Source: Octopus sinensis
Taxonomy: Eukaryota
Reading direction: 5' to 3'
Assembly: GCF_006345805.1 (NCBI RefSeq)
Contig: NW_021829867.1
Location: 1 to 38,173, forward strand
DNA: 38,173 bases
Shown: one piece after another, positions 1-38,160 of the stretch
Position numbering within the stretch: position 1 is the first letter of the stretch
Layout: the number at the start of each line of letters is the position of its first letter
Position numbers and translations under genes: made by a program
The notes under the pieces: model-generated
The model's input: only the letters and a program-made list of their open reading frames with translations
Databases searched by the model: none
What the model was told of the DNA's origin: nothing

Positions 1-412
1 GAGGATGAGAATTACAAGAAGAAAAAGGAGCAGGAGGGGAGAAGAGGAGGAGGAAGAGAAAATGAAGAAGAAAATGAAGAAGAAAAGGAAAAAAAAAACT
101 TAGAAGAAGAAAAGTAGGAGGAGGAGGTGAAGAAGAAGAATAGAAGAAATGAAGAACAAGAAGAAGAAGATAAAGAAGGAGAAAAAGAAGAAGAAGAAGT
201 GAAGAAAATGAAGGAGGAGGAGGAACAGGAGGAGAGGCGGACGTGGAAGAAGACGAAGAAGAAGAAGAAGAAGAAGAGGAAGTAGAAGAAGACGAGGAAG
301 AAGAAGAAGTAGAAGATGAAGAAGAAGAAGAAGGAGAAGGAGAGAAGAAGAAGAAGAAGAAGAAGAAGAAGAAGAAGAAAAAGAAAAAGAAGAAGAAAAA
401 GAAGAAAATAAC
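1..412 (+). repeat. (GAA/GGA)n purine tract, truncated by the window edge
   Basis: Nearly pure A/G on the + strand. Source of the poly-L/F/S ORF artefacts. Confidence 0.97.
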
Positions 413-1560
413 ACATTGAAAATCATGGTGTTGAAGACGAATCTGGAAATGTTCTCAAAATATCAGGAAATAATTCAAGGATAGATCGATAAATTCTGGG
501 CGAGAAGACATGGCTGAAAAATCAGGGAATATACGGAATCAGAAATCAACATATTCAAATGCACTCATACGCATTCTTATATTCATAGTATCAACGACGG
601 AATGAGGTATGCACACTCACATCACACATATTCCCACTCACCCTTGTGGACATATGGTGAGAGAGATTATTTATTTCATATCGCTTCATTGTCACAAGAA
701 TATTAGAAAACACACGCTTACAAGAAATATATCAGCAGTTTAATTGTATCAGGCCAAATATTCCAGCTTACAAGTACAGTAAGTATTTCAGGTTTACAGA
801 TAGAATGTATGTGACTATATTATTCGAATATATATTTTCCGCTTCCACTTCAGTTGCTCTCTTACATAAATAACGGGAAGTGAATGACAAAATTCGAATT
901 TGAATGATAATATCGAAACACGAAGGAGAATATTGAAATAGAAATGAGGAGATGTAAAACTAAATAAGGAATATTATATTCACATTTCACACAGAACTAC
1001 ACTTATATATGAACATACACATATACTTCAGCTAAAAATATTTGATGCAAACATGTAAACTAACAAACGTTACCATTTCTAATACAAATTCATATCAAAA
1101 TCATTGAAATTTGGGGAACAAAAATGAGTTATTGAGATGCGAATTGAAACAAAGCAACTATAATAAAGGAACATTATATTTTTCCTATTATTTCATTTTC
1201 TCTCTCAAATTCTCTCTCTTTCTTTCACATTGTCTCGCTCTCTCATATTCTCTTTGTATCTTCCTAAATCGTGTTGATTCTACAAATTCGAATTGATTTT
1301 GTTTGGCGCAGTCTGAAATGTTTTACATTTGTGAGCTGATATATCAGCATCAATTATTACTTTCGGAAAATAGTATCAAGAAACTGAACGAACTTACAAG
1401 TATTTTAAATTTGAAAGCCCCGTGAATGCTCCTTCTTTAATGGTTGCAATGTTGTTCCCTCGCAGATTTCTATAGCAGTAAAGAAAGAGTAAAATAGATT
1501 ATATGGAAAATATTTGTGATACGACATCAAACACTGTGACTTCAGAATGAAAGGAAGAAA
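413..1560. repeat. Tandem intron+exon duplication unit, copy A (unique part)
   Basis: 413-807 matches 2809-3203 (offset 2396) and 1111-1560 matches 3221-3670 (offset 2110), with only scattered substitutions. Contains LRR exon 3. Confidence 0.95.
1398..1469 (-). CDS. 72-bp LRR exon (coding exon 3), one 24-aa typical-type LRR
   Basis: ...ctttactgctatag|a aat ctg cga ggg aac aac att gca acc att aaa gaa gga gca ttc acg ggg ctt tca aat tta aaa tac tt|gtaagt gives (L)NLRGNNIATIKEGAFTGLSNLKY(L). It is phase 2/2 and a paralog of exon 2. The gene continues beyond the left edge. Confidence 0.95.
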
Positions 1561-2808
1561 AGGCAGAAAGATAACGAAGAAGAAAAGGAAGAAGAAGGAG
1601 GAGGAGGTGAAGAAGAAGAAAAAGAAGAAGAAGAAGAAGAATTAGTAGAAGAAGAAAGGAGAAGAAGGAGAAGAAAAAGAAGAGGAAGAAGGAATAGGAG
1701 GAAAAAGGAGGAGGAGGATGGTAAAAGGGAAGAAGTAGTAGCGGAAAAAGTAAAAGAAGAAGAAGGAGGAGGAGGAGGAAAAAGGAGGAGGAGGAGAATG
1801 ATGGGGAAGAATAAGTAGGAGAAGATGAAAAAGAAGAAGAAGATGAAGGAGGAGGAGGATGAGAATAACAAAAAGAAGAATATAAGAAGAAGAAAGAGGA
1901 GTAGGAGGAGAAGTAAATGTTGAAGTAGAAAGTAGTAGAAGAAGAAGAAGAAGGAGAAGAAGTATGAGAAGAAAAAAAGAGTAGAAAAATGAGAAGAAGA
2001 AAAGAAAAAGGAGGAGGAGGAAAAGAAGAAGAAGAAGAATTAGAAGAAGACGCAGAAGAAGAAGAAAAAGAAGCGGGAGAGGAGGGGGAGGAGGAGAATT
2101 ACAAGAAAAAAAGGAGGAGGAGGGGCGGAGAGGATTGGGACGAAAGAAAGAAGAGGAAAAAAGAAGTAGAAGAAGGAAGAGGAAAAAGGAGGAGGAAGCA
2201 ATGAAGGGGAAAAGTAGGAGTAGAAGAAAAAGAAGAAGAATAAGAAGAAGAAGGAGGAGGAGAAGGAGGAGGAGTAGTTGAAAAAGTTGAAAGTAGAAGA
2301 GGATGTAGGAGAAGAAGAAGAAGAAATAAGTAGAAGCGATAGAAGAAGAAAAAGAATAAGGAGAAGAGAAGAAGAAGAAGAAGAAGAAGACGAAGAAGGA
2401 GAAGAAGAAGAAGAAGAAGAAGAAGAAGAAGAAATTAAGAACGATCAGGAGAGAGGGAGGAGGAGAATTATTACAAGAGGAAAATGATGAGGATGGGCGG
2501 AGTGGTGGAGGAAGAGAATTTAAGAAGAAATGAGAATAGAAGAAGAAGAATTAGAAGAGGAAGAAGGAGTAGGAGGAGTAGAAGTAGAAGAAAAAGAAAA
2601 GAAGAGAAGAAGAAGAAGAAGAAGAAGAAGGAAAAGAAGAAAAAGAAGAGAAGAAAGAAGGAGGAGAAGGAGCAGCAGGAGGAGAGGAAGAGGAAGAGGA
2701 AGAAGAAGAAGAAGTAGAGAAGAAGAAGAAGAAGAAGGAGAAGAAGAAGAAGAAGAAGAAGAAGAAGAAGAAGAAGGAGGAGAAGAAGAAGAAGAAGACG
2801 AAGAAGAT
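1548..2808 (+). repeat. About 1.26 kb imperfect (GAA/GGA)n purine tract
   Basis: Directly visible. It lies in the intron between LRR exons 2 and 3 and ends about 78 bp before the exon 3 acceptor in transcript orientation. Confidence 0.97.
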
Positions 2809-3670
2809 ACATTGAAAATTATGGCGTTCAAGATGAAACTGAAAATGTTCTTAAAATATCAGGAAATAATTCAAGGATAGATCGATAAATATTGGGCGAG
2901 AAGACATGGCTGAAAAATCAGGGAATATACGGAATCAGAAATCAACATATTCAAATGCACTCATACGCATTCTTATATTCATAGTATCAATGACGGAATG
3001 CGGTATGCACACTCACATCACACATATTCCCACTCACCCTTGTGGAAATGTGGTGAGAGAGATTATTTATTTCATATCGCTTCATTATCACAAGAATATT
3101 AGAAAACACACGCTTACAAGAAATATATCAGCAGTTTAATTGTATCAGGCGAAATATTCCAGCTTACAAGTACAGTAAGTATTTCAGGTTTACAGATAGA
3201 ATGCATAAATAACAAAACTTTTGGGGAACAAAAATGAGTTATTGAGATGCGAATTGAAACAAAGCAACTACAATAAAGGCACGTTATATTTTTCCTATTA
3301 GTTCACTTTCTCTCTCAAATTCTCTCTCTTTCTTTCACATTGTCTCGCTCTCTTATATTCTCTTTGTATATTCCTAAATCGTGTTCATTCTACAAATTCG
3401 AATTGATTTTGTTTGGCGCAGTCTGAAATTTTATACATTTGTGAGCTTATATATCAGCATCAATTATTACTTTCGGAAAATAGTATCAAGAAACTGAACG
3501 AACTTACAATGTCTTTAAATTCGAAAGCCCCGTGAATGCTCCTTCTTTGATGGTTGAAATCTTGTTCCCTCGCAGATCTCTATAGCAGTAGAGAAAGAGT
3601 AAAATAGATTATTTGGAAAATATTTGTGATACGATATCAAACACTTTGACTTCAGAATGAAAGGAAGAAA
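2809..3670. repeat. Tandem intron+exon duplication unit, copy B (unique part)
   Basis: Paralog of 413-1560 that lacks about 286 bp of it. Contains LRR exon 2. Confidence 0.95.
3508..3579 (-). CDS. 72-bp LRR exon (coding exon 2), one 24-aa typical-type LRR
   Basis: ...ctctactgctatag|a gat ctg cga ggg aac aag att tca acc atc aaa gaa gga gca ttc acg ggg ctt tcg aat tta aag aca tt|gtaagt gives (L)DLRGNKISTIKEGAFTGLSNLKT(L). It is phase 2 at both ends, in frame with exon 1, and matches xLxxNxIxxIxxxAFxGLxxLxxL. Confidence 0.95.
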
Positions 3671-3811
3671 AAGAAGAAAGATAACGAAGAAGAAAAAGAA
3701 GAAGAAATATAACGAAGAAGAAGAGAAGAAGAAGAAGAAGAAGAAGAGAAGAAGAAGAAGAAGAAGAAGAAGAAGCAGAAGGAGAAGAAGAAGAAGCAGG
3801 AGGAGAAGAAT
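3658..3811 (+). repeat. Short (GAA)n tract marking the right end of the duplication array
   Basis: Directly visible. Same position relative to exon 2 as the long tract has to exon 3. Confidence 0.95.
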
Positions 3812-4014
3812 ATCTTAATGTGGCAGCCGTTTCATGTTTATTTCCTACTTGACTTGCACAACCTCGAGTATCCGCTTCGCCTCTCTATGTACCAACACAC
3901 ACATCCACACACATACACGCACATGTATGCACATATAAGCACATACACACATATACACTCAGAAATATACACACATATGTATATCTACCTCTGGGTGCGA
4001 GTATGTGTGTGAAC

Positions 4015-5050
4015 CTCGTCCCCGTAGTGGTGTCCTTTTATCTGTCGATACAGTTTATTATCGAATCTAAAGGTGTTGTCTTCTAGTTCCCGGCGTGTGT
4101 CTTTGGAAATGCGTTTTGAAGCGTTCGTCCATCCGTCCGCTATGTTTTTCTACCCAGTGTTTGATTGCTCCCAGGCCCAAAGTGTGATGTATTTGTACAA
4201 AGATTAGTCAAATCTTTTAAGTATAGTACGTTCTGGGACAGTGGGTGGAATGTGTTTGATGAAATCCATATCGTCTCGGGTATAGCTGGGCATTAATGGG
4301 CACAACGGTTTGAGGAGTATATCCAAAAGATGGCTCAGTTGTTGTGTTGGGGCTCAAGGTCCAGCAACTGTTGGTCTCAATTTGATGTCAGTAGGTCTTA
4401 GTATTTTTATATGCTGATCCTTGCATTTTGGAGCATTCGCAGATCTTGGGTGATCCATAGAAATTACTCTCTTTCATTACAGAGCTGCATAAATAATCTT
4501 TCTCTTTATCTGTGAACGAACGTTGGTATTCATTTATCTTAATTTTGGGTGTATTCATTATTACTTTCTCCGCGAGTCTTGGTTCTTCCTTGTAGCAGGA
4601 TTAGTCTGTTTCCAATATTTTATCTTTATTGTAGTCTTGGTCCGTGACTGCTATCGCCCTTCCCCAATCGGTTTCGTTTAGGATGATTAAATTGTCAATT
4701 TGCAGTTTGTAAGGCTTTCTTTTCGTCTTCACGAAGGTTCTGTTTGCATTTTCGTATATTTTATTATATAAGATATAAAACAGATTTAAGTCACCACGTA
4801 AAGTATGAATGAAAAACACACATGCATGTAAAATATGAGAAAAGAATGGATGTTCAAAATATTTGTGATTTGAATTAGATTTACAAAGCCTTCGTTGCAA
4901 CATCAGTTTTCAGTGGAAGATATTTTTATCATCTCAGAAGTCAGCTTTATTTATAAATATCTTGTTTCTGTCCAATGAGCATTCTATTTGTTATTACACT
5001 TTGCTGTCAAAAGTAATTTATCTTTGCAAAAGTAAACTCCTCTCCTTTGC
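4015..5050 (-). mobile_element. Degenerate Penelope-like retroelement RT remnant
   Basis: Frameshifted minus-strand translation gives LIILNETDWGRAIAVTDQDYNKDKIL (ADKG-region-like), LRPTVAGP*APTQQLSHLLDILLKPL..SYTRDDMDF, and NTFRFDNKLYRQIKG, all resembling Penelope RT motifs. Confidence 0.8.
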
Positions 5051-6429
5051 ATAATTGATGCATAAAAGTTCTTCACAAAAATAAATAAACCCCCAAAACT
5101 TCAAGACTGAAATAATAGACTAGGAAGGAAAACATAACAGAAATAGAAAGGGATTTATTAATAGAATTGGTGATGGTAGAGTGGGGAAACCCTGATATAA
5201 TTTTGAGTTATGTGCTACAAAGGAGAACAACCTTACATGGTGATTTAACTGGTTAAGGGTGTTATTTAAAAAAGGGATGTGGCAACATACATTGCCTTAG
5301 TTTTTTCGTCTTTTTTTAGCCCTTTGCTCCTTACTCTTGCTGTATTAAACCTCAGTTTGTTACCATTATTAGCCATCTATGCTAAATCCTTCATCCCCTA
5401 AATAGCATCCCTGTTAATCATTCCTGTAAAGGTTAACCTGCAACAGCTCAAACGGAATATTAATGATATCTGTCTCACAAGTATTGGAGATCTTGCAGGG
5501 GTTAAAAAACTTGTATGATCCTTTCTCCAAAATCGGTAAAATAAAAAGTGTGGAATTTTAACTCAGGTCACAGACAACTGGACAATATACTGCAAGGTGT
5601 CTTATTCGAGGTCCTCATAGTTGCATTTGTTCATTGAACTGTTATGGTTCTTTATTGATCTCTGAAATGAATGACCCAAGGTTGACCTTGGCGGGACTTG
5701 AAGTCAGATTGCCGTGTGTCAGAACGCAATGTATTCTGCTAGACGGTCAAAAGATTTGTGCCTATCCTCGCTCAAGTTATGAACGATGAAAATATCTAAC
5801 TTATTAAATAGAACTTCAACTTTACTATTCAACATCTTGAGTTATACGAGATTTAGGAATTCCATTATTGACACTTTTCTCTTTATTTTACATTAGGATT
5901 TCTCATTTTGTCAAAACGTTCCAAATGTTTTGAGAAACAGATCTGATCGAATGAATTGATCCACTTTAGTATTAGAATATTTGATTAAAACTGAAAGTTT
6001 AAGGTGATTAATGCAATGATGCAAGCCAATTAACTGGAAATAATCACCTGGAAGAGCAATGTGTTGCAACAGAGTATTTGTTATGATTGCATGTATCAAA
6101 TAATTTCTCTTTTTTATTCTATTCCATTTCTTGAGACATTAAATTTTAATAATTTACTTAAAAATTGCGTAAGATTTCAGGTGAACGGGGATACATCAAT
6201 CAGCCGAAACTTCAATTAACCTTCCATAATTTTGTAATAAGGTTTATTGTGTTCATGATAGGGTAAATTTTACTAATGACATTCTATCAAAAATAAATTC
6301 CTCATAATTTGTTAAAATAACACTATTTTGATTTCTTCACTTAGGTATTTTAAGAATTTGGCAATTTAAGCGGATCTCGTCATTATCTGCTGTTTAATCC
6401 ATCTGTTTCATTTTTAATTATAAAAATAA

Positions 6430-6642
6430 TAATTTCTTCCATAGGAACAAACCTGAAATTTTGGGAAAGGGACAAGTCCTTTACATTGATCTCAGAGATA
6501 AATTGCTATTTATTTTACCGACTCCAAAAGAATGAAAAACAAAGTCAACCTCGACAGAATTTAAAATCGAAACGTAAAGACGAACGAAATACCGCTCAAC
6601 ATTTTGTCTGGCGTGCACAACGATTCTGATAGCTCGCTGCAT
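6430..6642 (-). mobile_element. SINE family B (tRNA-derived), degenerate
   Basis: Reverse-complement similarity to the copies at 16664 and 27869 (gtcgactttgcctttcatcctttcggggtcgat block). Confidence 0.7.
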
Positions 6643-7099
6643 ATTCTATTATAAAATTAACACAAATTAACAATTAACAATTATTCTGTGACGCGATCAA
6701 CTGATATTATATCATATTACTGTAATAATAAGCAACAATTCAACTAATTAATGATATAATATAACTATGTGGAATACACGTTTTCTTAGCACTAAAGTTT
6801 TTATACTGTCCGTTCATTGAATATACCGTAAGATTTGATAAGTTCAGACAAATGAAATCAAAGTCAGATACTAGTCATATCCAATCTCTGTGTATGCGAT
6901 GTTATATATTATAAATTCAATATGGTAAGTAACAGTTTATTTGACTTCACAGCAGGTAACATATCGATTTGTTTTACTCTAACATAAGATTGTGCTTAAA
7001 GCTGTGAGATAAACAGCATAAGCGATTAGCTGAGAACATAATCAATGAGAATTTAAAATATTGGATGTGGAAAATACGTAGAAAGTGTCAAATACTTAC

Positions 7100-7290
7100 A
7101 AATATTCAACATTCGTCGGAATTGGTTGTGGAATCGATGGTAAATTGCGATGTGCACAATTTATTCTCGTTGTAAGTGAATTGCAAGTACATTTCTTGCA
7201 TATATCTGAATCAGCTTGAGTCTCCAAAAACAATATCGTACACAGTATCAACACAAGAGACCGTCTATATGATACTACGTGGTGAAACAT
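7100..7290 (-). CDS. First coding exon of a secreted or membrane LRR protein: signal peptide + LRR N-terminal cap (LRRNT)
   Basis: Translates to MFHHVVSYRRSLVLILCTILFLETQA|DSDICKKCTCNSLTTRINCAHRNLPSIPQPIPTNVEY(L). It has a hydrophobic signal core, a CxxCxC..C cap and LxxIPxxIP. The acceptor is ...ttttcttcttttacag (AG at 7312-7311; exon starts 7310, ATG at 7290). The donor is GTAAGT at 7099-7094, splitting the Leu codon tt| (phase 2). Confidence 0.92.
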
Positions 7291-8458
7291 ATTGCCAGGC
7301 GTAGATTTATCTGTAAAAGAAGAAAATAGGAAATGTCAGAGATTTCAATGTTATTAACTTCAAATTGCAGATTCTCTGAAGGAACTAAAATTCACCCCTG
7401 TTCCACATGACAAATATATTTTTGTTTTCATGATTGGATATTTAAAGCTAAAAAATTAAATTTCGATAAATTAGTGTGAAGAAATTTATAAAAATATTAT
7501 AGCTTTAACGCGTAATAATATCAAAGAAAACACCAAACTCACACACACAAACACAAACGCACTCCTACACACATCTGTAACCATACTCGGAGGGGGGTGT
7601 AATATATATATATACAAAACTAGCGAACCATGAGTTTCGTAGACCCTAAATACGCAGTGGTTGTAAACCCGGTTGGGTCGTTAAATCCGATGGGACCCCA
7701 CAAGCAACTGTATTGTATCAAAGGATTTTTCCTGTACCCCAGTTTTAGAAGCATTCATACACATTTTTCCTAAAATACACTTTCATGATTTCATTTTACT
7801 TACTTTTTTTTTTACTGAAAACAAGAATAAAGCATGAACGTAAATCTATATATATAAAACTCAACTTGTGTGTCTATCTGTGTATCTGTGTGTGTGTCTG
7901 TGTCTTTTACTTCCCGGCACATCTCCTCCTAACAACAAATCGTAGAACCACCAAACATGGGTCACTTAAAGTTTAGGCGAATGAAAATTGAACTGCGCTA
8001 TTTCTGTTCCGAAATTCATCTCGCAAGTGCAAAAATCGATAATGTGTTTGTTTAGGCCTTCCCCCATGCATTGAATAGTGAACTTTACTCAGTCAGCTGT
8101 TTGACGTGAACTGTGTTCACCACGCGTGCAAGCATGCGTAAATTGCATGAAAAATAAAAAAGCAAGACGAATCGCCGTAAACATTGTAGAAATTCGGCAA
8201 AGAAATGAATTTTCGGGATGTAGCCTGGAGGGTTTTTCCCTATTAATCGTTTGGACTTTGTGAACTCATACCAATTGTTTTCATAACATTTTCATAACAT
8301 TTTTAACGCTTGAATTAAATGTGACCATTTTGCGTTGAATCACTAACCAAATTTTAGCAGGCAGGATTTTTGATCATCACAATATATCGCTAGCGACTCC
8401 CTGAAACTCTCCTCTGATATCCTCGTTGAGAAATACTGTTCTAAAAGAATAATTCAAC

Positions 8459-14894: not shown

Positions 14895-15657
14895 AACTTT
14901 ATACTTTTGATATCTTCATTATTAATTACCAGAAAAAAGAAAAACATGAATGCAATTATCGCCAGCGGCAGGCAATTCTGCATCAGAAGTAAATACTTTG
15001 AAAATGATGTGGTAAAAATTTGAAAAGTTTCAAGTGGTTGTAAGGAACTTAACAAGATACCGATCGGCCAAATTACTGGGACCCAAAAAATCGGAACCTG
15101 TTCCCAAGCGGTCATAGTGGATAAACTGAAACACATACACATATACATACACACGCTCACATATACATAGATATATACATATATGTAAAAAAAAAATATA
15201 TATATATACATAAGTGTGTGTGTGTGTGTGTATATATATAACAAAGTAAGTTTGGGGCTACTAATAAATATATATAATTGAAATATAGGATAAAATTTTT
15301 ACGAGGATTTATTAAGTAGTTATTGTGAAAAACCTCAGAAGGGATAACTTATTAATTATTCCCTATGAATAAATTTATATATATTAAGGGCATTACTATA
15401 CATAAATGCCTCACGCTAGGAGGGTCTCTTGAAGTCAAAACTACTATAATGCCCACATTGTACAAACCGCGAGGGAATGCAACTCTCAAAGCGAGCCTCC
15501 AGAAACAGACTTAGCTGAATATGATTTCGTAATTAGTGAAGAAAATGCACTTTTCACTCATCGGCGCAACCTTAGTCAAGACATATAAAAATTATCAAAA
15601 ATCAATTTACCAGACGAACACATGTATTCTTGCGTTTGATACAATGTGGTTATTATA
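14895..15657. repeat. Segmental duplication block, paralog of 25680-26450
   Basis: Long colinear match, e.g. aacaagataccgatcggccaaattactgggac and cccaagcggtcatagtggataaactgaaacac in both. Confidence 0.95.
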
Positions 15658-21639: not shown

Positions 21640-22110
21640 GAAATATTATGAGAAGAAATTTACCAAAAACTTTCAACCATGATAAAAAATGAATGCCTTG
21701 CTGATGCCTTCCATGAAATGGCACAAAAGACGCAAATCTACATAGAAACACTTTATTCCCTTCTTACATACCAACACCAAAATGAGAACCAAAGCAGAAC
21801 TCCAGAAACGGATATCCACAACCTAAATTCAACCACACAAGACGTACTAAAAGAATTGAATGAACTCAGCTTGGAAAAAGGAGACATACAAAAAGAGAAA
21901 TCAAATGAAAAACATCCGGGTTAAGATATTAAATAAAAGAAACCAAGCCCTAAACAATGAAAACCTAGCCAACACTTATGAACAGTGGAGGGGCAGAGAA
22001 GAAGTAATACTTTCAATAAACTTTCGTATCAAAGAAATAACGTCAGAAGCAAAGGAAGAAACGAAAAATATTTGAGAAAAATCGTTTAGAAGCGACATTA
22101 ACCGGAAATG
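21640..22110 (+). mobile_element. Possible LINE ORF1-like remnant (partial duplicate at 20180-20290)
   Basis: Frameshifted, protein-like run IKNECLADAFHEMAQKTQIYIET..LNELSLEK/..ILNKRNQALNNENLANTYEQWRGREEVILSINFRIKEIT. Family assignment is from recall only. Confidence 0.4.
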
Positions 22111-22685
22111 ATCAATATATTGTTATACGATCAGACGACAGATTTTTCATGTTTTAGAATCGATCTCACTTTTGCTCGATAACTATTGATCATCGATCTC
22201 TTCCCAAATACAACGTCTAAAGTCAACATTAAAATGAAGTATATTTCTAAATTCTTTGTAAGACCCTCCAGTGTTCACATTGTCATCCACCATTCTCTTC
22301 GTGAGGAATCTGTAAAGCTTAAGCTTGATGTGCTAGAAATAGCAGCCAAATATTTCCTCTGAGCAGACGATATATTCATTTAACGATAGTGTCACTTCAG
22401 AAAATCAAGTTATCAATAACGATAATGATTTAAATGGTATATATAATGATTGACATGGAAGCAAACGATACAAATTCAATTAACAATAGTTCGTTTCAGA
22501 AAATTACGTTTGTGAAATAAAGTATATGATAGAGATTATACAATTCTGAAGAGGAATTAAAGGTTTTAGCAGCTTTAAAGTTATGGGAAAAGAATTTTCG
22601 TTATCAAAGTAACAATATTTTATACGAAAGAAGGATGACAGGCGAGGATTTTGTGGTGTGAAGGGTCTTCAATTGTATATGTCCT

Positions 22686-22721
<36 letters not shown>

Positions 22722-22740
22722 TGTGTGTGTTTGTGTGTGA
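22078..22740. repeat. Segmental duplication block, paralog of 33691-34350
   Basis: Colinear match from aaaatcgttta.aagcgacattaaccggaaatg to gaaggatgacaggcgaggattttgtggtgtgaagggtcttcaattg. Confidence 0.95.
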
Positions 22741-22871
22741 TGCAATGAGATACATAACCGTGCCTAAGTGTTTCTTTAATATAAAACTGAATTGAATATT
22801 AATGACAATATTAAATGATAATATTATATGACGTAATTTTACTGTGAAGGAGGTTTAGTCTTCAATGTTTT

Positions 22872-23100
22872 CAGTCTCGTCCACCACACTACTTGTTTAG
22901 CCACCGGGCAGAAGAAACTGCTTTTCCTTTCCGGCCAAAAGAAGGTGGCGGGGCGATCTTTACAATGAACTCGGCTCGTAAACTGGACGGACGAGTGCAT
23001 GCAGGACTATTTCATCGCCCTGCGCACATCCCGACACATCCTTCCGACAACACTTTCGCATCTGTAGAGCTTGTCTTGAATCGGCAGAGCACCCCGGTTT
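22872..23100 (-). mobile_element. Tx1/L1-like LINE 3' fragment (duplicate of part of 35228-36287)
   Basis: Same sequence and same left junction as the 35.2 kb copy. Encodes the degenerate C..C..HAL zinc-finger region. Confidence 0.75.
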
Positions 23101-25407: not shown

Positions 25408-26450
25408 CATTTTATTGTTGCATCCTTAAAAATTTCAGGAACACAAACCATAGAGCTTCAATTCCCGTTCGCTGTGTCGATGAGATCCGACAATTCTAAT
25501 TTATGGCGTAGAATTTAAACATAGCTGTAAACAATTCCTTACGTTTGTCATCCATTGGGCTGCGCCTATGCTGGGGCACTGCCTTAAAGTGTTTAGTCGC
25601 ACAAATCGACCCCAGTATTTGTTGTTAAGCCTGCTGCGTATTCTCGCGATCCCTTCCGCTGATTTGCCTAGAGTTACGCAACTTTATACTTTTGATTTTT
25701 TTATTATTACTTACCAGAAAAAAGAAAAACATGAAGGCAATTATCGTCAGCAGCAGGCAATTTTGAATCAGACGTAAATGCTTTGAAAATGACGTGGTAA
25801 AAATGTGAAAAGTTTCAAGTGGTTGTAAGGAATTTAACAAGATACCGATCGGCCAAATTACTGGGACGTAAAAAACCGGAACCTCTTCCCAAGCGGTCAT
25901 AGTGGATAAACTGAAACACATACACATATACATACACGCGCTCACATATACATAGATATATACATATATGTAAAATAATAAATATATATATATATTATAA
26001 CTAAGTGTGTGTGTGTGTGTGTGTATATATAACAAAGTAAGTTGGGGGTACTAATAAATATATATAATTGAAATATAGGATAGAATTTTACGAGGATTTA
26101 TCAAGTAGTTATCGTGAAAAACCTCAGAAAGGATAACTTATTAATTATTCCCTATGAATATATTTATATATATTAAGGGCATTACTTATACATAAATGCC
26201 TCACGCTAGGAGGGTCTCTTGAAGTATAAACTACTATAATGCCCACATTGTACAAAACGCGAGGGAATGCAACCCTCAAAGCGAGCCTCCAGAAACAGAC
26301 GTAGCTGAACATCATATGATTCCGTAATTACTGCACAAAATCCACTTTTCACTCATCAGCGCAGCCTTTGTCAAGACATAAAAATTAACAAAAATCAACG
26401 TACCAGACGAACACTTGTATCCTTGTGTTTGATACAATGTGGTTATTATA

Positions 26451-26808
26451 TTCAGGCAGTCATAGTTGACGGAAGCGATGTACGCATTCGCCACCTCGAC
26501 TCGACCCTTCACGAACAGCTTCCTCTCTGCCAATTTCTGGGTGAGATCGACTATCCTGTTCGTCACCTCTCACCCGTTGTTGTCCCACCTCGGGGTCTAC
26601 AGCAGACCAGACCCCAAACAGTTTAACCTGTCTTTCACTTTAGCGCCCTACAAACTGTCGGTTGGTATGGGTCTGCCTCTCCATCTGCCGATTTGCAGGC
26701 CCACCGACTTCTCTTGGATAAGCTTTGCTCCTATCAACGCTTCGTGGACAGTATTATGATGACATAGTCCGTGTTAGCTGATACGAACATTCCACATCCT
26801 AAGACATA
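26451..26808 (-). mobile_element. Tx1/L1-like RT fragment (duplicate of 35938-36287)
   Basis: Degenerate YADD region (VSANTDYV), KSVGLQIGRWRGRP and KLAERKLFVKGRVEVANAYIAS. Confidence 0.85.
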
Positions 26809-27165
26809 TATATATATATATATTTATATATATATGTTATCTGTGTTTCTAATTATATAATTTCGATTTGAAAATTTCAGTCAGCAGTTTATGATGATTG
26901 GCGGTGGAAGTGGAAGAGTTAAAATGAGAGAGGGGTAGAGGGAGTGATAGAAGAGTGAGAGGGGAAAGAAGAGGAGGAGAGTTGATGTGTACGATTGTTC
27001 GTGTGTGTGTGTGTGTGTGTTTCTCTGTGTGTGATGTAATATATACATAACCCTGCCTAAGCTTTTCTTTAATATGAAACTGGAGGGAATATCACATTAA
27101 CGATTGCATTAAATGATATTTTACTGTGAAGAAGTGAGTGAAATGTTTAGCCGGAAGAAATTTCC

Positions 27166-33650: not shown

Positions 33651-34307
33651 ATATATACATACGTCAAAGAAATTTAGTAGCTATGGAACATAAAATCGTT
33701 TAAAAGCGACATTAACCGGAAATGATTAAAATATTGTTATACGATCAGATGATAGATTTTTCATCTGTTAGAATCATCTCACTTTTGCTCGATAAGTATT
33801 GATCATCGATCTCTTCCCAAATACGATGTCAAAAGCCAACATTAAAATGAAGTACATTTCTAATTTCATTGTTAGACCCTCCAGTGTTCACATTGTCATC
33901 CACCATTCTCTTCCTGAAGAATCTCTGAAGCTTAAGCTGGATGTGCTAGAAATAGCAGCCAAATATTTCCTCTGAGCAGACGATAGATTCATTTAACGAT
34001 CGTGTCACTTCAGAAAATCAAGTTATCAATAACGATAATAATTTAAATGGTATATATAATGATTGACATGGAAGCAAACGATACAAATTCATTTAACAAT
34101 AGTTCGTTTCTGAAAATTACGTTTGTGAAATAAAGTATATGATAGAGAAATTATAACAATTCTGAAGAGGAAATAAAGGTTTTAGCAGCTTTAAAGTTAT
34201 GGGAAAGGAATTTTCGTTATCAAAGTAGCAATATTTTATACGAAAGAAGGATGACAGGCGAGGATTTTGTGGTGTGAAGGGTCTTCAATTGTATATATCC
34301 TGGTCTG

Positions 34308-34340
<33 letters not shown>

Positions 34341-34418
34341 TTGTGCCTGTGTGTGTGTTATGCACTGAGATATATAAAGATTATAATAATGGACACAATT
34401 ATATTCCAAACTTCTATA

Positions 34419-34830
34419 GGCGCGGGAGTGGCTGTGTGGTAAGTAGCTTGCTTACCAACCACATTGTTCCGGGTTCAATCCCACTGCGTGGCACTTTGGG
34501 CGAGCGTCTTCTACTATAGCCTCGGGCCGACTAAAGCCTTGTGAGTGGATTTAGTAGACGGAAACTGAAAGAAGCCCGTTGTATATATGCATATACATAT
34601 ATTTCTATGTGTGTGTTTGTGTGTCAGTGTTTGTTCCCCCCCCCAACATCGCTTGACAACCGATGCTGGTGTGTTAATGTCCCTGTAAGTTAGCGGTTCG
34701 TCAAAAGAGACGATAGAAGAAGTACTAGGCTTACATGAATAAGTCCTTGGGTCGATTTACTCGACAAAAGGCGGTGCTCCAGCACGGCCACATTCAAATC
34801 ACTGAAACAAGTAAAAGAGTAAAAAAGAGA
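34419..34830 (+). mobile_element. SINE family A, full length
   Basis: A-box tggctgtgtgg (34429-34439), B-box gggttcaatcc (34471-34481), CORE-like ggcactttgggcgag block, internal TA/GT tract, and aagtaaaagag tail. Confidence 0.92.
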
Positions 34831-35227
34831 GAGAGAGAGCTCATCTGTACCCAAACCTTCAATAGTTTGATGTCCTATTTTCATAGGAGTGAGGGGAAGA
34901 GGGAGAGGAAAACATGCAGGGGCCTCTAAACTGTTTAACGTATTTGTATCTGAGAAAGTCTCCAGTATTCTTGATGCCTTCTGCAAAAAGTGAAAGATAA
35001 AAAAGGAAATTGGAAAAAAAAACTAATTGTCTTCCAGTATCTGTGTGTGTGTCTGTGTGCGTGTGTGTGTGTGTCTGTGTGTGTTTGTGTGTGATGCAAT
35101 GTGATATAAATAACCATGCCTATAAGTTTCTTTAATATAAAACTGAAGTGAATATTAATGATAATATTAAATGATAATATTAAATGACATAATTTCATTG
35201 TGAAGGAGGTTTAATCTTTAATGTTTT

Positions 35228-36287
35228 CAGTCTCGTCCACCACACTACTTGTTTAGCCACCGGGCAGAAGAAACTGCTTTTCCTTCCCGGCCTAAAGAAG
35301 GTGGCGGGGCGATCTTTACAATGAACTCGGCTCGTAAACTGGACGAACGACTGCATGCAGGACTATTTCATCGGCCTGCGCACACCCCCTACATATCCGT
35401 CCGACAACACTTTCGTATCTGTAGAGCTTGTCTTGAATCGGCAGAGCTCCCCGGTAGCACTGCCAGGCCAGGGATTTCTGGAAGTTAAAGACCAGTTAGT
35501 TGATTCCCTCCACCAACGCCCAGAATTTACCCCGATTTCGTCGTTGTTCTTTCCCCTCTACTAATCCCCTATAGAAATCCATGGTGGAACTTTCAACGCC
35601 CGCGTTGCCGACTGGCAGAAAGCTGTGAGAGCTTGCCGACACTCCAGGTGCCAAGCGCCCTTTCTTGGCCAACGCTTGACTCAGTACTGTAGCTTCTTCA
35701 GTGAGACGAGCTGCGGAAAGTCCCGTTTGACAAACAGTCAATCCCCCATGCTCACCGTTAAAGAAACGCAGGAGATGTCTCCGTCTCAGCGCATGTCTGC
35801 AAATCATTAACGACGGCATGTCCAGTACTCCACTGAGAGGTTGTTGACAGCAGATAGAACGTCTGATGAGCGGAACACGTCCCTTCTTTAGAAAGCAGAA
35901 TAACAAACGCTCTAACTTTATCGGGCATGGGACTACATTCAGGCAGTCATGACGGAAGCGAGGTACGCATTAGGCATCTCGATTCGACCCTTAACGAACA
36001 GCTTCCTCTCTGCCAATTTCTGTGTGAGATCGACTATCCTGTTCGTCACCTCCCACCCGTTGTTGTCCACCTCAAGGTCAAGAGCAAACCAGACCCCAAG
36101 CAGTTTAACCTGTCTTTCCATTTAGGACCCTAAAAACTGTCGGTTGGTATGGGTCTGCCTCTCCATCTGCCGATTTGCAGGCCCACCGACTTCTCTTGGA
36201 TAAGCTTTGCTCGTATCACCGCTTCGTGGACAGTATTATGATGACGTAGTCCGTGTTAGCTGATACGAACATTCCTCATCCTAAGAC
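35228..36287 (-). mobile_element. Tx1/L1-like LINE remnant (RT C-terminus to zinc finger), internally deleted
   Basis: VKLLGVWFALDLEVDNNGWEVTNRIVDLTQKLAERKLFVKGR and FLKKGRVPLIRRSICCQQPLSGVLDMPSL. Confidence 0.88.
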
Positions 36288-36308
36288 ATATATATATATA
36301 TATATATA

Positions 36309-37736
36309 CAATATGTTACATTACTCGGTAGTCAAGATAAAACTCTGAGTTTCAGATGCCGAAGTGGAAATCCACAACACCATCTCTTCGGTTATCTGGC
36401 TATTTGAAAACGTTATGAAAAAATACCGTTAAATAAAGGGAAATTGCTCTGTTATAACTCTGCTTGCCTGCGTACTTATACATCGCTCGCATTTTTCGTC
36501 ATAAAAATTATATAAAAATACATAAAAAATATATAAAAAATATATAAAAATATATAAATTCTTCTTGGGGCATAACATAGAAAGCATGTTCTATCTGTTT
36601 TCTTTAGGGGACCAAAAACGTAACAGAAATTTAGTCACATGTGGGCATGATCCGAAAAGCTCTGTCCTTGTATTTAGACATGTAGTAGGGTCTAAGCTGC
36701 TTTTCCAGATAAGCCATCTCTCCATGTCGCATAGACCGCACCTTCCGCTGCGTTAGTATAGGGCTTACATCTGGCCAAAATCTTCCATTGTATGTTATAA
36801 TCGACACCTTTATCTCTTAAAGACCAAATATGATTAGACAATTGTGTCGCTTTTCTTTTGTTCCAGTGCCTAAAGCTCAAAGTGTGGTTATTGAACCTGG
36901 TCTTGAAATTACCCTCTGTAAGGCCCACGTATTTCTTCGTCGAAACGGTGTCTTTAGTGGTTATAGAGTTTACGGTAGCTTCATATATGATGGTCTTGGA
37001 CATGCAAGCTCCATTTAGCGGGCACAATTCTTTATTCCTGCATGAACAGCTGTTTTCTTCTTGTGTTTTTTGTATGTTATGTTTGATTATGTTTTTAAAA
37101 TTGATAGTTGAACTAAAACTAATTTTTAAATTGTGTCTATTGAAGAGTTTCCTATAATTATGGTTAACTGGAAAATGTCTATCTATCAGTGCTAGGAAAT
37201 ATTTACCTATATTGAAGGCCACCTCGGGTGAGTAAGGGGGCGTAAACCAGATTACCTTCCTATTTCTATTATTCCTTTTCCTTACTGTTGGGCTAGTGAT
37301 AGGTGTATATTTTATTTATCGCTAAAACCACTATCTTTTAAAGCCTTATTATAAACTGGAGCAACGCTATTAAAGATGTCCTCATCAGATGAGAGGCTAG
37401 AAATCCTCTTACTAATATTTTTAACTAAATTTTTGAATACTATAGAGGGATGGCATGGACCTACATTAATGTAACTTAGTCTATCATTGGGCTTCCTATA
37501 AGGCTTATAAATATTCTTATTAAGATCTAAGGAAACGTCTAAGAAATTGACAACCGTCAGGTTAGTATCTATAGTTATACTAAGTCCGAAGTGTTTCATT
37601 AACTGGATAATATCCTTCCTAAAACGATCTTGTGCCGGTCCATTTGAATTAGCTGTTAAGCGAGGGCCTTTTTTCTTATTCTTAATAGCTTTAAACCAGT
37701 TTACGACTTCTATACTATTGGACCATTGTACTAGCC
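36309..37736 (-). mobile_element. Naiad-clade Penelope-like element, 5'-truncated and RT-core-deleted, inserted in (TA)n
   Basis: GLSITIDTNLTVVNFLDVSLDL..PYRKPND, RKVIWFTPPYS..NIGKYFL, linker CSC..CPLNGAC, GIY-YIG IIYEA..YVGLTEGNFKTRFNNH, and C-terminal RCGLC..LNTRTELFGSCPH. At least two frameshifts. The paralogous site near 26810 is empty. Confidence 0.92.
36335..36397 (-). ncRNA. Variant type I hammerhead ribozyme in the Naiad 3' UTR
   Basis: AGATAA-CCGAAGA-GATG...CATC-T-GAA-ACTC-A-GAGT-T-TTATCT. Perfect 6-bp stem I and palindromic stem III. The core has U4C and an extra U before GAAA. Confidence 0.6.
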
Positions 37737-37767
<31 letters not shown>

Positions 37768-38077
37768 GGCGTCTGTATTTCTAATTATATAATTTCGATT
37801 TGAAAAGTTTCAGTCAGCAGTTTATGATGATTGGCGGTAGAAGTGGAAGAGTTAAAATGAGAGAGGGGGAGAAGTAGTGATTGAAGCAAGAGAGAGTGGG
37901 GAAAGAAGATGAGGAGGGTTGATGTGTACGATTTTCAGTGTATGTGTATTTGTCTGTGTGTGTGATGCAATTAGATACATAACCCTGCCTAAGTGTTTAT
38001 TTAATATGAAACTGGAGGGAATATCGCATTAACGATTGCGTTAAATCACATAATTCTACTGTGAAGAAGTGAGTGAA

Positions 38078-38160
38078 ACATTAGACAAGGCGGTGAAAGT
38101 TGGCAGAATTTCAAGTATGTCAGGCGAAATGCTAAGCGATATCTATTCTGCCGTTAAGAG
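38078..38160 (+). mobile_element. SINE family B, 5' part
   Basis: aaggcggtgaaagttggcagaat...ggcgaaatgctaagcgatat. Confidence 0.7.

What the first reader, a model, noticed from the sequence alone, without database searches (positions are those of the whole stretch)
413..3811. LRR gene whose array grows by tandem duplication of one-repeat intron+exon cassettes
Seen: each 2.1-2.4 kb tandem unit carries exactly one 72-bp phase-2/2 exon encoding one LRR. The introns are nearly as similar as the exons, so the duplication is recent and module-wide. A third (GAA)n tract at 1-412 predicts another cassette just left of the window. Established: symmetric 72-bp LRR exons can be skipped, added or swapped without frameshift, and such exon-per-repeat dynamics are described for candidate pathogen receptors in the brown alga Ectocarpus. 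Inference: this may be a copy-number-variable or combinatorially spliced LRR recognition receptor. An ORF finder would miss it.
Basis: partly seen in the sequence, partly recalled or inferred. Interest (0 to 1): 0.85.

Follow-up and report, generated by a model that had tools for sequence, protein, structure and literature searches.

The report
Octopus LRR receptor gene built from exon cassettes
The left end of this Octopus sinensis scaffold holds the start of a receptor gene whose binding domain is built from repeated one-exon modules, each preceded by a (TTC)n tract; relatives show that module number and the binding-surface residues vary strongly.

Summary
On the minus strand, two 72-bp, phase-2/2 exons (3579..3508 and 1469..1398) each encode one canonical 24-residue LRR. 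Each sits in a 2.1-2.4 kb tandem unit bounded by (GAA)n tracts. One correction: the introns are more alike (96.0%) than the exons (87.5%).

I also found the first coding exon (7310..7100), which encodes a signal peptide and an LRRNT cap and ends in the same phase. The spliced 112-aa product is exactly RefSeq XP_029654374.1 of Octopus sinensis. The window is a whole 38,173-bp scaffold, so the gene is already annotated, but it is truncated and misnamed.

Relatives share the identical signal peptide. Their full architecture is LRRNT, then 2 to about 10 cassette LRRs, LRRCT, HRM, GPS and 7TM. This is the octopus-specific adhesion-GPCR expansion.

In three paralogous loci, every (TTC)n tract is followed 66-99 nt later by an LRR exon. 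Cassette introns are about 95% alike, whereas the codons for concave-face positions 3, 5, 7 and 8 are hypervariable.

RefSeq lists up to 13 isoforms per paralog, differing by 24-aa steps. Some contain chimeric repeats, so some of these isoforms may be artefacts.

Copy-number variation and splicing of this particular gene remain untested.

The parts
7100..7310 (-). First coding exon. The acceptor AG is at 7312-7311 and the ATG at 7290-7288. The CDS 7290..7100 is 63 codons plus TT, and the donor GTAAGT is at 7099-7094. It encodes the signal peptide MFHHVVSYRRSLVLILCTILFLETQA, an LRRNT cap (CKKCTCNSLTTRINC) and the start of LRR1.
   Evidence: PDB alignments place it at the N-terminal cap of LGR4, LRRC15, LRRC4 and LRRC32. 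Pfam LRRNT is weak, E=0.058. The product equals RefSeq P0004.
3580..7099 (-). Intron 1 (3520 nt). It is unique sequence that ends in the first (TTC)n tract.
   Evidence: It is collinear at 93-96% with intron 1 of three paralogous loci.
3664..3810 (-). (TTC)n tract on the sense strand ((GAA)n on the + strand). It opens cassette 1 and ends 68 nt before the exon.
3508..3579 (-). LRR exon 1 of the array (type A), 72 bp, phase 2/2. It encodes DLRGNKISTIKEGAFTGLSNLKT.
   Evidence: It is identical to LRR1 of O. vulgaris P0015.
2815..3507 (-). Unique intron part of cassette 1. It carries a roughly 300-bp deletion relative to cassette 2 and to the paralog cassettes.
1561..2807 (-). (TTC)n tract (1.25 kb, degenerate) that opens cassette 2. 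It ends 71 nt before the exon.
1398..1469 (-). LRR exon 2 of the array (type A), 72 bp, phase 2/2. It encodes NLRGNNIATIKEGAFTGLSNLKY. If the donor is left unspliced, TT|GTAAGT reads Leu-stop, and that is where the RefSeq model ends.
413..1397 (-). Unique intron part of cassette 2.
1..412 (-). Third (TTC)n tract, cut by the end of the scaffold. By analogy with the paralogs it should open a further LRR exon about 70 nt beyond the scaffold end.
   Evidence: The L002 contig ends 10 nt into just such an exon.

Best explanation
Positions 1-7310 (minus strand) are the 5' part of a member of an octopus-specific family of LRR-bearing adhesion-GPCR-like genes. The gene encodes a signal peptide, an LRRNT cap, and then an array of LRRs with one repeat per 72-bp phase-2/2 exon.

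Each exon belongs to a cassette. On the sense strand the cassette runs: (TTC)n tract of 0.15-1.4 kb, about 70-100 nt, the exon, then 0.7-1 kb of unique intron.

Shown here:
- the exon and cassette anatomy;
- identity of the spliced product with a RefSeq model;
- the same cassette in paralogous loci, in two types, A (..IKEGAFTGLSNLK..) and B (..ISRIEKEMFQGLHNLE.), arranged in different orders and numbers;
- a dead cassette exon in one paralog;
- hypervariability confined to the codons for LRR positions 3, 5, 7 and 8 (with 10 and 12 moderately variable), against introns and an exon core that are about 95% alike.

Inferred:
- Cassettes are gained, lost and reshuffled by unequal recombination or slippage between the flanking (TTC)n tracts. 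This never breaks the reading frame, because every exon is symmetric.
- The introns are kept alike by the same exchanges, while selection keeps the ligand-facing residues different.
- The symmetric exons can be skipped, so one gene may give several ectodomains.
- The rest of the gene (last LRR, LRRCT, HRM, GPS, 7TM) lies beyond the scaffold end, where the assembly breaks in the tract.
For: Gene anatomy and identity:
- Exons and splice sites.
- The LRR_8 hit and the alignment to N-terminal caps.
- The 112-aa product equals XP_029654374.1, XP_029654376.1 and XP_036354634.1, on a contig of 38,173 bp, which is the window length.

Family architecture:
- Relatives with the same signal peptide carry LRR+HRM (P0017), LRR+GPS (P0019), LRR+7tm_2 (P0066) and LRR+GPS+7tm_2+Death (P0067, O. 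bimaculoides 'GPR126-like').
- This fits the published octopus-specific adhesion-GPCR group 3, in which 5 of 22 sequences have LRRs and one has a Death domain. That paper reports positive selection and expression in nerve cord, suckers and skin.

Cassette rule: 13 of 13 resolved tracts are followed by an LRR exon 66-99 nt later.

Hypervariability:
- Segregating sites are 17/31 in the hypervariable exon part, against 66/494 in introns (p=2e-7) and 6/41 in the exon core.
- pN/pS is 1.78 for the six variable codons and 0.14 for the other 17.
- Entropy peaks at positions 5, 7, 8 and 3 across 37 type-A and 16 type-B units.
- In exon 1, the signal peptide has pN=0, while the mature LRRNT has pN 0.105 against pS 0.065.

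Birth, death and splicing:
- Repeat number varies from 2 to at least 10 among family proteins.
- L002 has a dead exon, with AG changed to AA plus a stop codon.
- Isoform ladders in 24-aa steps appear in four paralogs.
Against: - No transcript or population data for this gene could be examined.
- The link to a 7TM domain rests on relatives, not on this scaffold. The 3' part of this copy might not exist, in which case it is a partial duplicate.
- All four O. sinensis loci examined end 0.8-1.4 kb after their last LRR exon, at a contig end. Array lengths in this assembly are therefore unknown, and mis-joins between near-identical cassettes are possible.
- Some RefSeq 'isoforms' contain chimeric repeats, with the first half of one exon joined to the second half of another (units j, m, n). 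This is the signature of reverse-transcriptase template switching, or of transcripts from unassembled paralogs.
- Synonymous divergence in the exons (0.23) also exceeds intron divergence (about 0.055). Positive selection alone does not explain this.
- The within-locus excess of intron similarity is small (0.040 against 0.050-0.063).
- The recombination and splicing roles proposed for the (TTC)n tracts are inference only.
Confidence: 0.75

Rival explanations
1. The annotated model is complete as it stands. The gene would make a small secreted LRR-only protein of 112 aa (signal peptide, LRRNT, two LRRs). The transcript would end in the intron after exon 1469..1398, where the unspliced donor supplies the stop codon.
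For: Three RefSeq accessions give exactly this protein. Every phase-2 TT|GTAAGT donor reads Leu-stop when unspliced, so short products are always possible.
Against: The product would lack a C-terminal cap. Paralog models end the same way, and always next to a contig end. L002's contig ends inside a further exon. Relatives with the same N-terminus continue into LRRCT, HRM, GPS and 7TM.
Confidence: 0.1
2. It is a dead or partial 5' gene fragment. A segmental duplicate copied the promoter, exon 1 and a few cassettes without the receptor body. The exons are decaying relics, and their high divergence is relaxed constraint.
For: There are several 93-96% identical copies of the 5' region on separate scaffolds. 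One cassette exon in L002 is clearly dead, and one in L003 carries 1-bp deletions and a stop. Exon synonymous sites are also diverged.
Against: Both exons here keep the frame, the acceptor, the donor and every scaffold residue of the LRR. Changes avoid the 17 structural codons (pN/pS 0.14) and pile up at six surface codons (pN/pS 1.78). The signal peptide has no replacement in four loci. Decay would not be patterned like this.
Confidence: 0.1
3. It is an ordinary LRR gene with one neutral exon duplication and constitutive splicing. The isoform ladders and the apparent diversity would then be artefacts of assembling and aligning near-identical repeats (haplotigs, collapsed arrays, template switching).
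For: Chimeric repeat units occur in RefSeq isoforms. All loci sit at contig ends. There are homopolymer-type 1-bp deletions in L003 exon 2.
Against: There are more than two distinct copies, with different A/B cassette orders. Repeat number differs among chromosome-scale O. vulgaris and O. sinensis models. Site-specific hypervariability is seen at the DNA level in assembled loci, independently of any transcript. Several isoforms skip whole, unchimeric exons.
Confidence: 0.05

Closest known systems
Octopus-specific adhesion-GPCR expansion ('group 3' of Ritschard et al. 2019, PMC6408891; O. bimaculoides 'GPR126-like', O. vulgaris 'ADGRG6-like')
   Same: Relatives carrying the identical signal peptide have LRR, HRM, GPS, 7tm_2 and in one case a Death domain. 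These are the same extra domains that the paper lists. The paper also reports clustered genes, positive selection, and expression in nerve cord, suckers and skin.
   Different: The passages of the paper I read classify the family by its 7TM and GPS domains. They mention neither the one-exon-per-LRR cassettes, the (TTC)n tracts, the two cassette types, the position-specific hypervariability nor the isoform ladders. This scaffold itself carries no GPS or 7TM domain.
Ectocarpus LRR-ROCO genes (Zambounis et al. 2012, PMC3341825)
   Same: Each LRR is one 72-nt, frame-preserving exon. There are local exon duplications and shuffling, non-coding LRR relics in introns, and diversifying selection on concave-face residues.
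   Different: The Ectocarpus genes belong to a different kingdom and have a different effector domain, a cytoplasmic ROC-COR GTPase. The octopus gene instead has a signal peptide and LRRNT, with adhesion-GPCR relatives. The exon boundary falls at a different place in the repeat (GxxPxxLxxxxxLxxLxLxxNxLx there; x5..x3 here). The passages I read do not mention microsatellite-bounded cassettes.
Animal eLRR genes with one LRR per 69-75-bp exon (Slit and others; Hoss et al. 2019, PMC6642158)
   Same: They show frame-preserving single-LRR exons, conserved exon structure and potential for alternative splicing. The repeat type is the 'typical' 24-residue extracellular LRR, and the best PDB matches are IGFALS, LGR4/5, LRIG1 and LRRC15.
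   Different: From my own knowledge, those are conserved single-copy developmental genes with fixed repeat numbers. Here the family is young, multi-copy and variable in repeat number, with hypervariable surfaces.
Lamprey variable lymphocyte receptors
   Same: They have LRRNT plus a variable number of 24-residue LRR modules, with diversity at positions 3, 5, 7, 8 and 10 of the beta-strand face (from my own knowledge; the general principle appears).
   Different: VLR diversity is made somatically by copying flanking cassettes into an incomplete gene. Nothing here indicates somatic rearrangement. Diversity is germline (paralogs, cassette number) and possibly arises by splicing.

Membership tests
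Extracellular 'typical' LRR protein with N-terminal cap | Tandem 24-residue LxxLxLxxNxIxxIxxxxFxxLxxL repeats recognised by LRR profiles | tested here: met
   Pfam LRR_8 gives E=6e-16 (49 aa) and 1.6e-16 (112 aa), above the 27-bit cut-off. The top PDB hits are eLRR ectodomains.
Extracellular 'typical' LRR protein with N-terminal cap | Signal peptide followed by a Cys-rich LRRNT (CxxCxC...C) directly before LRR1 | tested here: inconclusive
   The sequence shows a hydrophobic N-terminus and CKKCTCNSLTTRINC. It aligns to the N-terminal caps of LGR4, LRRC15 and LRRC32. However, Pfam LRRNT gives only E=0.058, below the cut-off, and no signal-peptide predictor was available.
Extracellular 'typical' LRR protein with N-terminal cap | C-terminal cap (LRRCT) | not testable with these tools
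   The scaffold ends before it. Relatives have ..NNLMKCGCHLPAFVKYIK..C after the last LRR.
Adhesion GPCR (class B2) | GAIN/GPS autoproteolysis motif | not testable with these tools
   It is absent from the window. It is present in relatives P0019 (E=9e-11), P0067 and P0141.
Adhesion GPCR (class B2) | Secretin-type seven-transmembrane domain (7tm_2) | not testable with these tools
   It is absent from the window. It is present in relatives P0067 (E=1e-23) and P0066 (E=8e-28). The O. vulgaris gene in the same 90% cluster spans 105.8 kb, and its DNA could not be fetched.
Exon-per-repeat LRR arrays (Ectocarpus ROCO type, Slit type) | Each LRR encoded by one 72-nt exon with the same intron phase on both sides | tested here: met
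   This holds for two exons in the window and nine more in three paralogous loci. All are 72 bp with AG...GTAAGT, except one dead and one damaged copy.
Exon-per-repeat LRR arrays (Ectocarpus ROCO type, Slit type) | ROC-COR GTPase (ROCO) or EGF/laminin-G/cystine-knot body (Slit) | tested here: not met
   Relatives carry HRM, GPS, 7tm_2 and Death domains instead. This gene works like these families but is not a member of either.
Somatically assembled LRR receptors (VLR type) | Incomplete germline gene plus donor cassettes lacking splice sites, assembled by gene conversion in lymphocyte-like cells | tested here: not met
   The cassette exons here have canonical splice sites and lie in order within introns of a spliceable gene. 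Somatic DNA could not be examined.

The most novel reading that the evidence does not exclude
The (TTC)n-bounded, symmetric LRR exon cassettes are a dedicated diversity engine for an octopus-specific adhesion-GPCR family. The tracts would act both as recombination substrates that add, delete and reshuffle cassettes in the germline, and as pyrimidine platforms upstream of each exon that make inclusion probabilistic. Individuals, and perhaps single cells in suckers, skin or nerve cord, would then display different LRR combinations. This would be a Dscam/protocadherin/VLR-like recognition code built on a GPCR.
Probability: 0.2. Interest if true: 0.85.

Novelty: new variant of a known kind. Interest (0 to 1): 0.6.

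Why it matters
Modular LRR arrays that diversify by exon gain, loss and skipping are known from brown-algal ROCO genes and from vertebrate NLR and Slit genes. Somatic LRR cassette assembly is known from lamprey VLRs.

Here the same logic appears on the ectodomain of a young, octopus-specific adhesion-GPCR family. That family is published as positively selected and as expressed in suckers, skin and axial nerve cord.

If the cassette and tract architecture really drives copy-number change and alternative inclusion, it gives a concrete, testable mechanism for rapid diversification of a sensory or recognition receptor repertoire in cephalopods.

It also matters for annotation. These genes are truncated at contig ends and are variously named LINGO-, LRRC4-, Slit-, chondroadherin- or ADGRG6-like, so the family is under-counted and scattered.

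Tried and rejected
- Searching the 49-aa two-repeat peptide in the large protein index gave only one 49%-identical hit. A transposon-like ORF gave one hit. From this I wrongly inferred that the organism was absent from the database. The 112-aa query including exon 1 then found it.
- An exact look-up of a spurious 77-aa intronic ORF, tried as a way to extend the contig, found nothing on record.
- A metagenome scan with the invariant exon core gave 0 hits.
- An Rfam scan of the window gave 0 hits.
I did not pursue it with pasted pseudo-proteins.
- The DNA of the O. vulgaris gene in the same 90% protein cluster as this product is not retrievable, because the gene range of 105.8 kb is too long.
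- Isoform X5 of the 72.6-kb paralog is not on record, because only the longest product is indexed. My guess that isoform X1 equals all five repeats is not in the collection.
- I looked for the upstream coding exon used in O. vulgaris models (MLMS.KKEGILN). A candidate exists in L002, but no counterpart was found in the window. The 5'UTR exon(s) implied by the acceptor at 7311 therefore remain unlocated.
- Alignment of the (GAA)n tracts to each other is dominated by low-complexity noise. The left tract aligns best (80% against a background of about 72%) to the right end of the middle tract, as expected for a unit that includes its tract, but crossover points cannot be placed.
- My first argument, that the left tract need not predict another cassette by symmetry with the right end, was dropped. 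On the sense strand the tract always lies at the 5' side of a cassette.
Full report
OBSERVATION

The left 3.8 kb of the window consists of two copies of a unique segment (413-1560 and 2815-3660). They alternate with three degenerate (GAA)n tracts at 1-412, 1561-2807 and 3664-3810.

On the minus strand each copy carries one 72-bp segment, at 1469..1398 and 3579..3508. Each is flanked by ...ctttactgctatAG and TT|GTAAGT. Each segment reads as one base, 23 codons and two bases. The products are (L)NLRGNNIATIKEGAFTGLSNLKY(L) and (L)DLRGNKISTIKEGAFTGLSNLKT(L).

This is a textbook 24-residue LRR with phase-2 introns on both sides. The spliced pair scores E=6e-16 on Pfam LRR_8. It aligns to eLRR ectodomains in the PDB, including IGFALS, LGR4/5, LRIG1, LRRC15 and TLR3/13. 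No other LRR exon exists in the 38 kb.

One statement is reversed. The introns are more alike than the exons, with 31/769 mismatches against 9/72 (Fisher p=0.005).

THE REST OF THE GENE IN THE WINDOW

A scan for cysteine-rich caps found the first coding exon on the same strand at 7310..7100. Its features are:
- an acceptor AG at 7312-7311, so at least one untranslated exon lies further upstream;
- an ATG at 7290;
- 63 codons plus TT, followed by GTAAGT.

It encodes MFHHVVSYRRSLVLILCTILFLETQA, a signal-peptide-like N-terminus. This is followed by DSDICKKCTCNSLTTRINCAHRNLPSIPQPIPTNVEY, which has the CxxCxC...C pattern of an LRRNT cap running into LRR1. The exon ends in the same phase, and with the same TT, as the LRR exons. 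PDB alignments place this stretch at the N-terminal caps of LGR4, LRRC15, LRRC4 and LRRC32. Pfam LRRNT is only weak, at E=0.058.

IDENTITY

The spliced 112-aa product is 100% identical over its whole length to a protein whose longest contig is 38,173 bp, which is the window length. That protein is XP_029654374.1 / XP_029654376.1 / XP_036354634.1 of Octopus sinensis, named 'LRR and Ig-like domain containing NOGO receptor-interacting protein'.

The window is therefore a whole scaffold of assembly GCA_006345805.1, and the gene is already annotated. The model stops at ...LKYL because an unspliced TT|GTAAGT donor reads TTG TAA.

FAMILY AND FULL ARCHITECTURE

The same 90% cluster holds O. vulgaris CAJ1099301 (480 aa, 'adhesion GPCR G6-like'). 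Its first LRR is identical to exon 3579..3508. Its gene spans 105.8 kb, so no DNA could be fetched.

An exhaustive HMMER search with that protein, followed by Pfam, gave relatives with the same signal peptide:
- P0017 (O. vulgaris, 844 aa): at least 10 LRRs plus HRM.
- P0019 (957 aa): 2 cassette LRRs, a terminal LRR, LRRCT and GPS.
- P0066: LRR plus 7tm_2.
- P0067 (O. bimaculoides 'GPR126-like', 1283 aa): LRRs, GPS, 7tm_2 and Death.

This matches the octopus-specific adhesion-GPCR 'group 3' of Ritschard et al. 2019. In that group 5 of 22 sequences have LRRs and one has a Death domain. The genes are co-localised and show signatures of positive selection. They are expressed in axial nerve cord, suckers and skin.

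They carry from 2 to at least 10 cassette-type LRRs.

THE CASSETTE IS FAMILY-WIDE

Three paralogous O. sinensis loci were fetched: L001, L002 and L003. They are collinear with the window at 93-96% identity over exon 1, intron 1 and kilobases of 5' flank.

In all of them each LRR exon is 72 bp with AG...GTAAGT. Each is preceded on the sense strand by a (TTC)n tract of 0.14-1.4 kb that ends 66-99 nt upstream. This holds for 13 of 13 resolved tracts. The fourteenth is the window's terminal tract, which is cut by the scaffold end.

There are two cassette types with unrelated introns:
- Type A: ..IKEGAFTGLSNLK.., acceptor ctatAG.
- Type B: ..ISRIEKEMFQGLHNLE., acceptor cttcAG.

They occur in different orders. 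The window has A-A, L001 has A-B-A, L002 has (dead A)-B-A-B-A, and L003 has A-A.

L002 keeps a dead type-A exon, with the acceptor changed from AG to AA and a GAA-to-TAA stop. The RefSeq model skips it. The L002 contig ends ten bases into a further exon. L003's second exon has 1-bp deletions and a premature stop. This could be real decay or a long-read error.

Every one of these genes runs to within 0.8-1.4 kb of a contig end. The assembly evidently breaks at these tracts, and the short RefSeq proteins (108-160 aa) are truncations.

It may, however, be the terminal 'NPIEKYEDGAF' LRR rather than another A or B cassette.

DIVERSITY PATTERN

Among seven type-A cassettes, pairwise diversity is:
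- 0.03-0.08 per 100 nt in 800 nt of downstream intron;
- 0.075 in exon nucleotides 26-66;
- 0.28 in nucleotides 1-25;
- 0.48 in nucleotides 67-72.

Segregating sites among the six intact cassettes are 66/494 in introns and 6/41 in the exon core. In the two variable stretches they are 17/31 (p=2e-7).

By Nei-Gojobori counting over 15 pairs, the six codons for LRR positions 5, 7, 8, 10, 12 and 3 have pN 0.46 and pS 0.26. The other 17 codons have pN 0.03 and pS 0.23. Across 37 distinct type-A and 16 type-B repeats, entropy peaks at positions 5, 7, 8 and 3 (1.8-3.3 bits) and is near zero at the scaffold positions.

These positions lie on the beta-strand of the concave, ligand-binding face. This rests on established LRR structure and is also stated in PMC3341825.

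Exon 1 behaves alike. The signal peptide has no replacement in four loci (pS 0.055), while the mature cap has pN 0.105 against pS 0.065.

Two things do not fit a simple story:
- Synonymous divergence in the LRR exons (0.23) is about four times the intron divergence.
- By introns, the window's two cassettes are each other's nearest relatives (0.040 against 0.050-0.063 to other loci). By exon, however, 3579..3508 is nearest to the first exon of L003 (0.083 against 0.125).

I read this as intron homogenisation within loci, by unequal exchange or conversion, around exons that are older and kept different. The margins are small and the sequences few.

SPLICING

RefSeq lists isoforms of paralogs that differ by whole repeats:
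- X2-X5 of the 72.6-kb scaffold gene each have four of five repeats: abce, bcde, acde and abde.
- A gene on a 52.8-kb scaffold has 13 isoforms, of 409, 385, 361 and 337 aa.
- A chromosome-placed gene has isoforms of 525, 501 and 477 aa.

There is a caveat. Three units in the 13-isoform set are chimeras, joining the first half of one exon to the second half of another within the invariant core (units j, m and n). Splicing cannot produce that. Reverse-transcriptase template switching can, and so can transcripts from unassembled paralogs. Part of the ladder may therefore be artefact.

For the window gene, only one protein is annotated.

MECHANISM: SHOWN VERSUS INFERRED

Shown: the cassette anatomy, its recurrence, variable number and order, one exon death, site-specific hypervariability, and the family's receptor architecture.

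Inferred:
- Unequal recombination or slippage between (TTC)n tracts adds, removes and shuffles cassettes. The homology between the two window units does begin and end inside tracts.
- Diversifying selection acts on the concave face.
- Exon skipping is regulated or stochastic. Long (UUC)n tracts are rich in UCUU motifs, with 31-156 per tract in the window. From my own knowledge, polypyrimidine-tract-binding proteins recognise such motifs. This is a hypothesis only.

COMPARISON AND NOVELTY

The closest functional analogue is the Ectocarpus LRR-ROCO family. It too has one 72-nt exon per LRR, exon shuffling, relic exons and positive selection on the concave face. One-LRR exons of 69-75 bp are also a known class in human genes such as Slit.

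By descent, the gene belongs with the published octopus adhesion-GPCR expansion. It is not a ROCO, Slit or VLR gene.

New here, as far as the papers I read go, are:
- the microsatellite-bounded cassette;
- the two cassette types;
- exons that are more diverged than their introns;
- the strict localisation of variability;
- the link between the scattered 'LRRC4-like', 'Slit-like' and 'LINGO-like' RefSeq fragments and that GPCR family.

I rate it a new variant of a known kind, with interest 0.6. The gene and the family expansion are already known. The architecture makes a diversification mechanism directly testable.

Noticed in passing
window 36692-37222 (-): A 176-aa ORF has a weak GIY-YIG match (Pfam E=0.0037, below the cut-off). 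Only one homolog (51% identity) turned up in the large protein index. It is probably a remnant of a Penelope-like or other GIY-YIG element.
   Followed up: partly
window 22078-23098 vs 33692-35455; 26447-27143 vs 35934-38078; 14895-15657 vs 25680-26450: Interspersed repeats of 88-93% identity lie within the window. The same elements lie upstream of the paralogous genes (L002 2921-5518, L003 5037-6838). L003 518-3035 matches window 30377-27875 at 93.6%, so the duplicated unit of this gene family extends at least 20 kb upstream of exon 1.
   Followed up: partly
L002 13724-13795: This is a dead type-A LRR exon in a paralog. The acceptor AG has become AA, and an in-frame GAA has become a TAA stop. 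The annotated model skips it. It is evidence of cassette death alongside cassette birth.
   Followed up: yes
L003 15913-15981: The second LRR exon of this paralog has three 1-bp deletions in short homopolymers. The protein model therefore ends ...GLSN, and the donor is damaged. I cannot tell real decay from long-read indel error.
   Followed up: partly
RefSeq isoforms X2, X7, X8 and X13 of the 52.8-kb-scaffold paralog (P0041, P0172, P0174, P0183): These contain chimeric LRR units: YLSENNISTIKEG joined to the second half of another exon. Canonical splicing cannot make them. This suggests template-switching artefacts, or transcripts of unassembled paralogs, in the evidence behind the models.
   Followed up: partly
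type-A LRR exons of the window, L001, L002 and L003: Synonymous divergence in the exons (pS about 0.23, even in the conserved core codons) is about four times the divergence of the flanking introns (about 0.055). Positive selection alone does not explain this. It points to intron homogenisation or to older exon lineages.
   Followed up: partly
window 3204-3219 vs 809-1109: Cassette 1 lacks about 300 bp that cassette 2 and the paralog cassettes (L001, L002) retain. It is a private deletion in the intron after exon 3579..3508.
   Followed up: yes
all four O. sinensis loci (window, L001, L002, L003): Each gene model ends 0.8-1.4 kb from a contig end, in or next to a (TTC)n tract. These tracts appear to break the assembly systematically, so the family is truncated and probably under-counted in GCA_006345805.1.
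   Followed up: yes
35 family proteins (e.g. P0003-P0007, P0019, P0021, P0041, P0181): The 26-residue signal peptide is identical or nearly so across paralogs and three octopus species, while the mature N-terminal cap varies. Relatives also carry a cysteine-rich segment after the LRRCT (QCQTC...CCVGHLCN) that has no Pfam hit.
   Followed up: no
window 7311-7312 and L002 5795-5833: The first coding exon starts at a splice acceptor, so upstream exon(s) exist. O. vulgaris models start 18 codons earlier, in an upstream exon (MLMS.KKEGILN). A matching exon is present in L002, but I could not find one in the window.
   Followed up: partly
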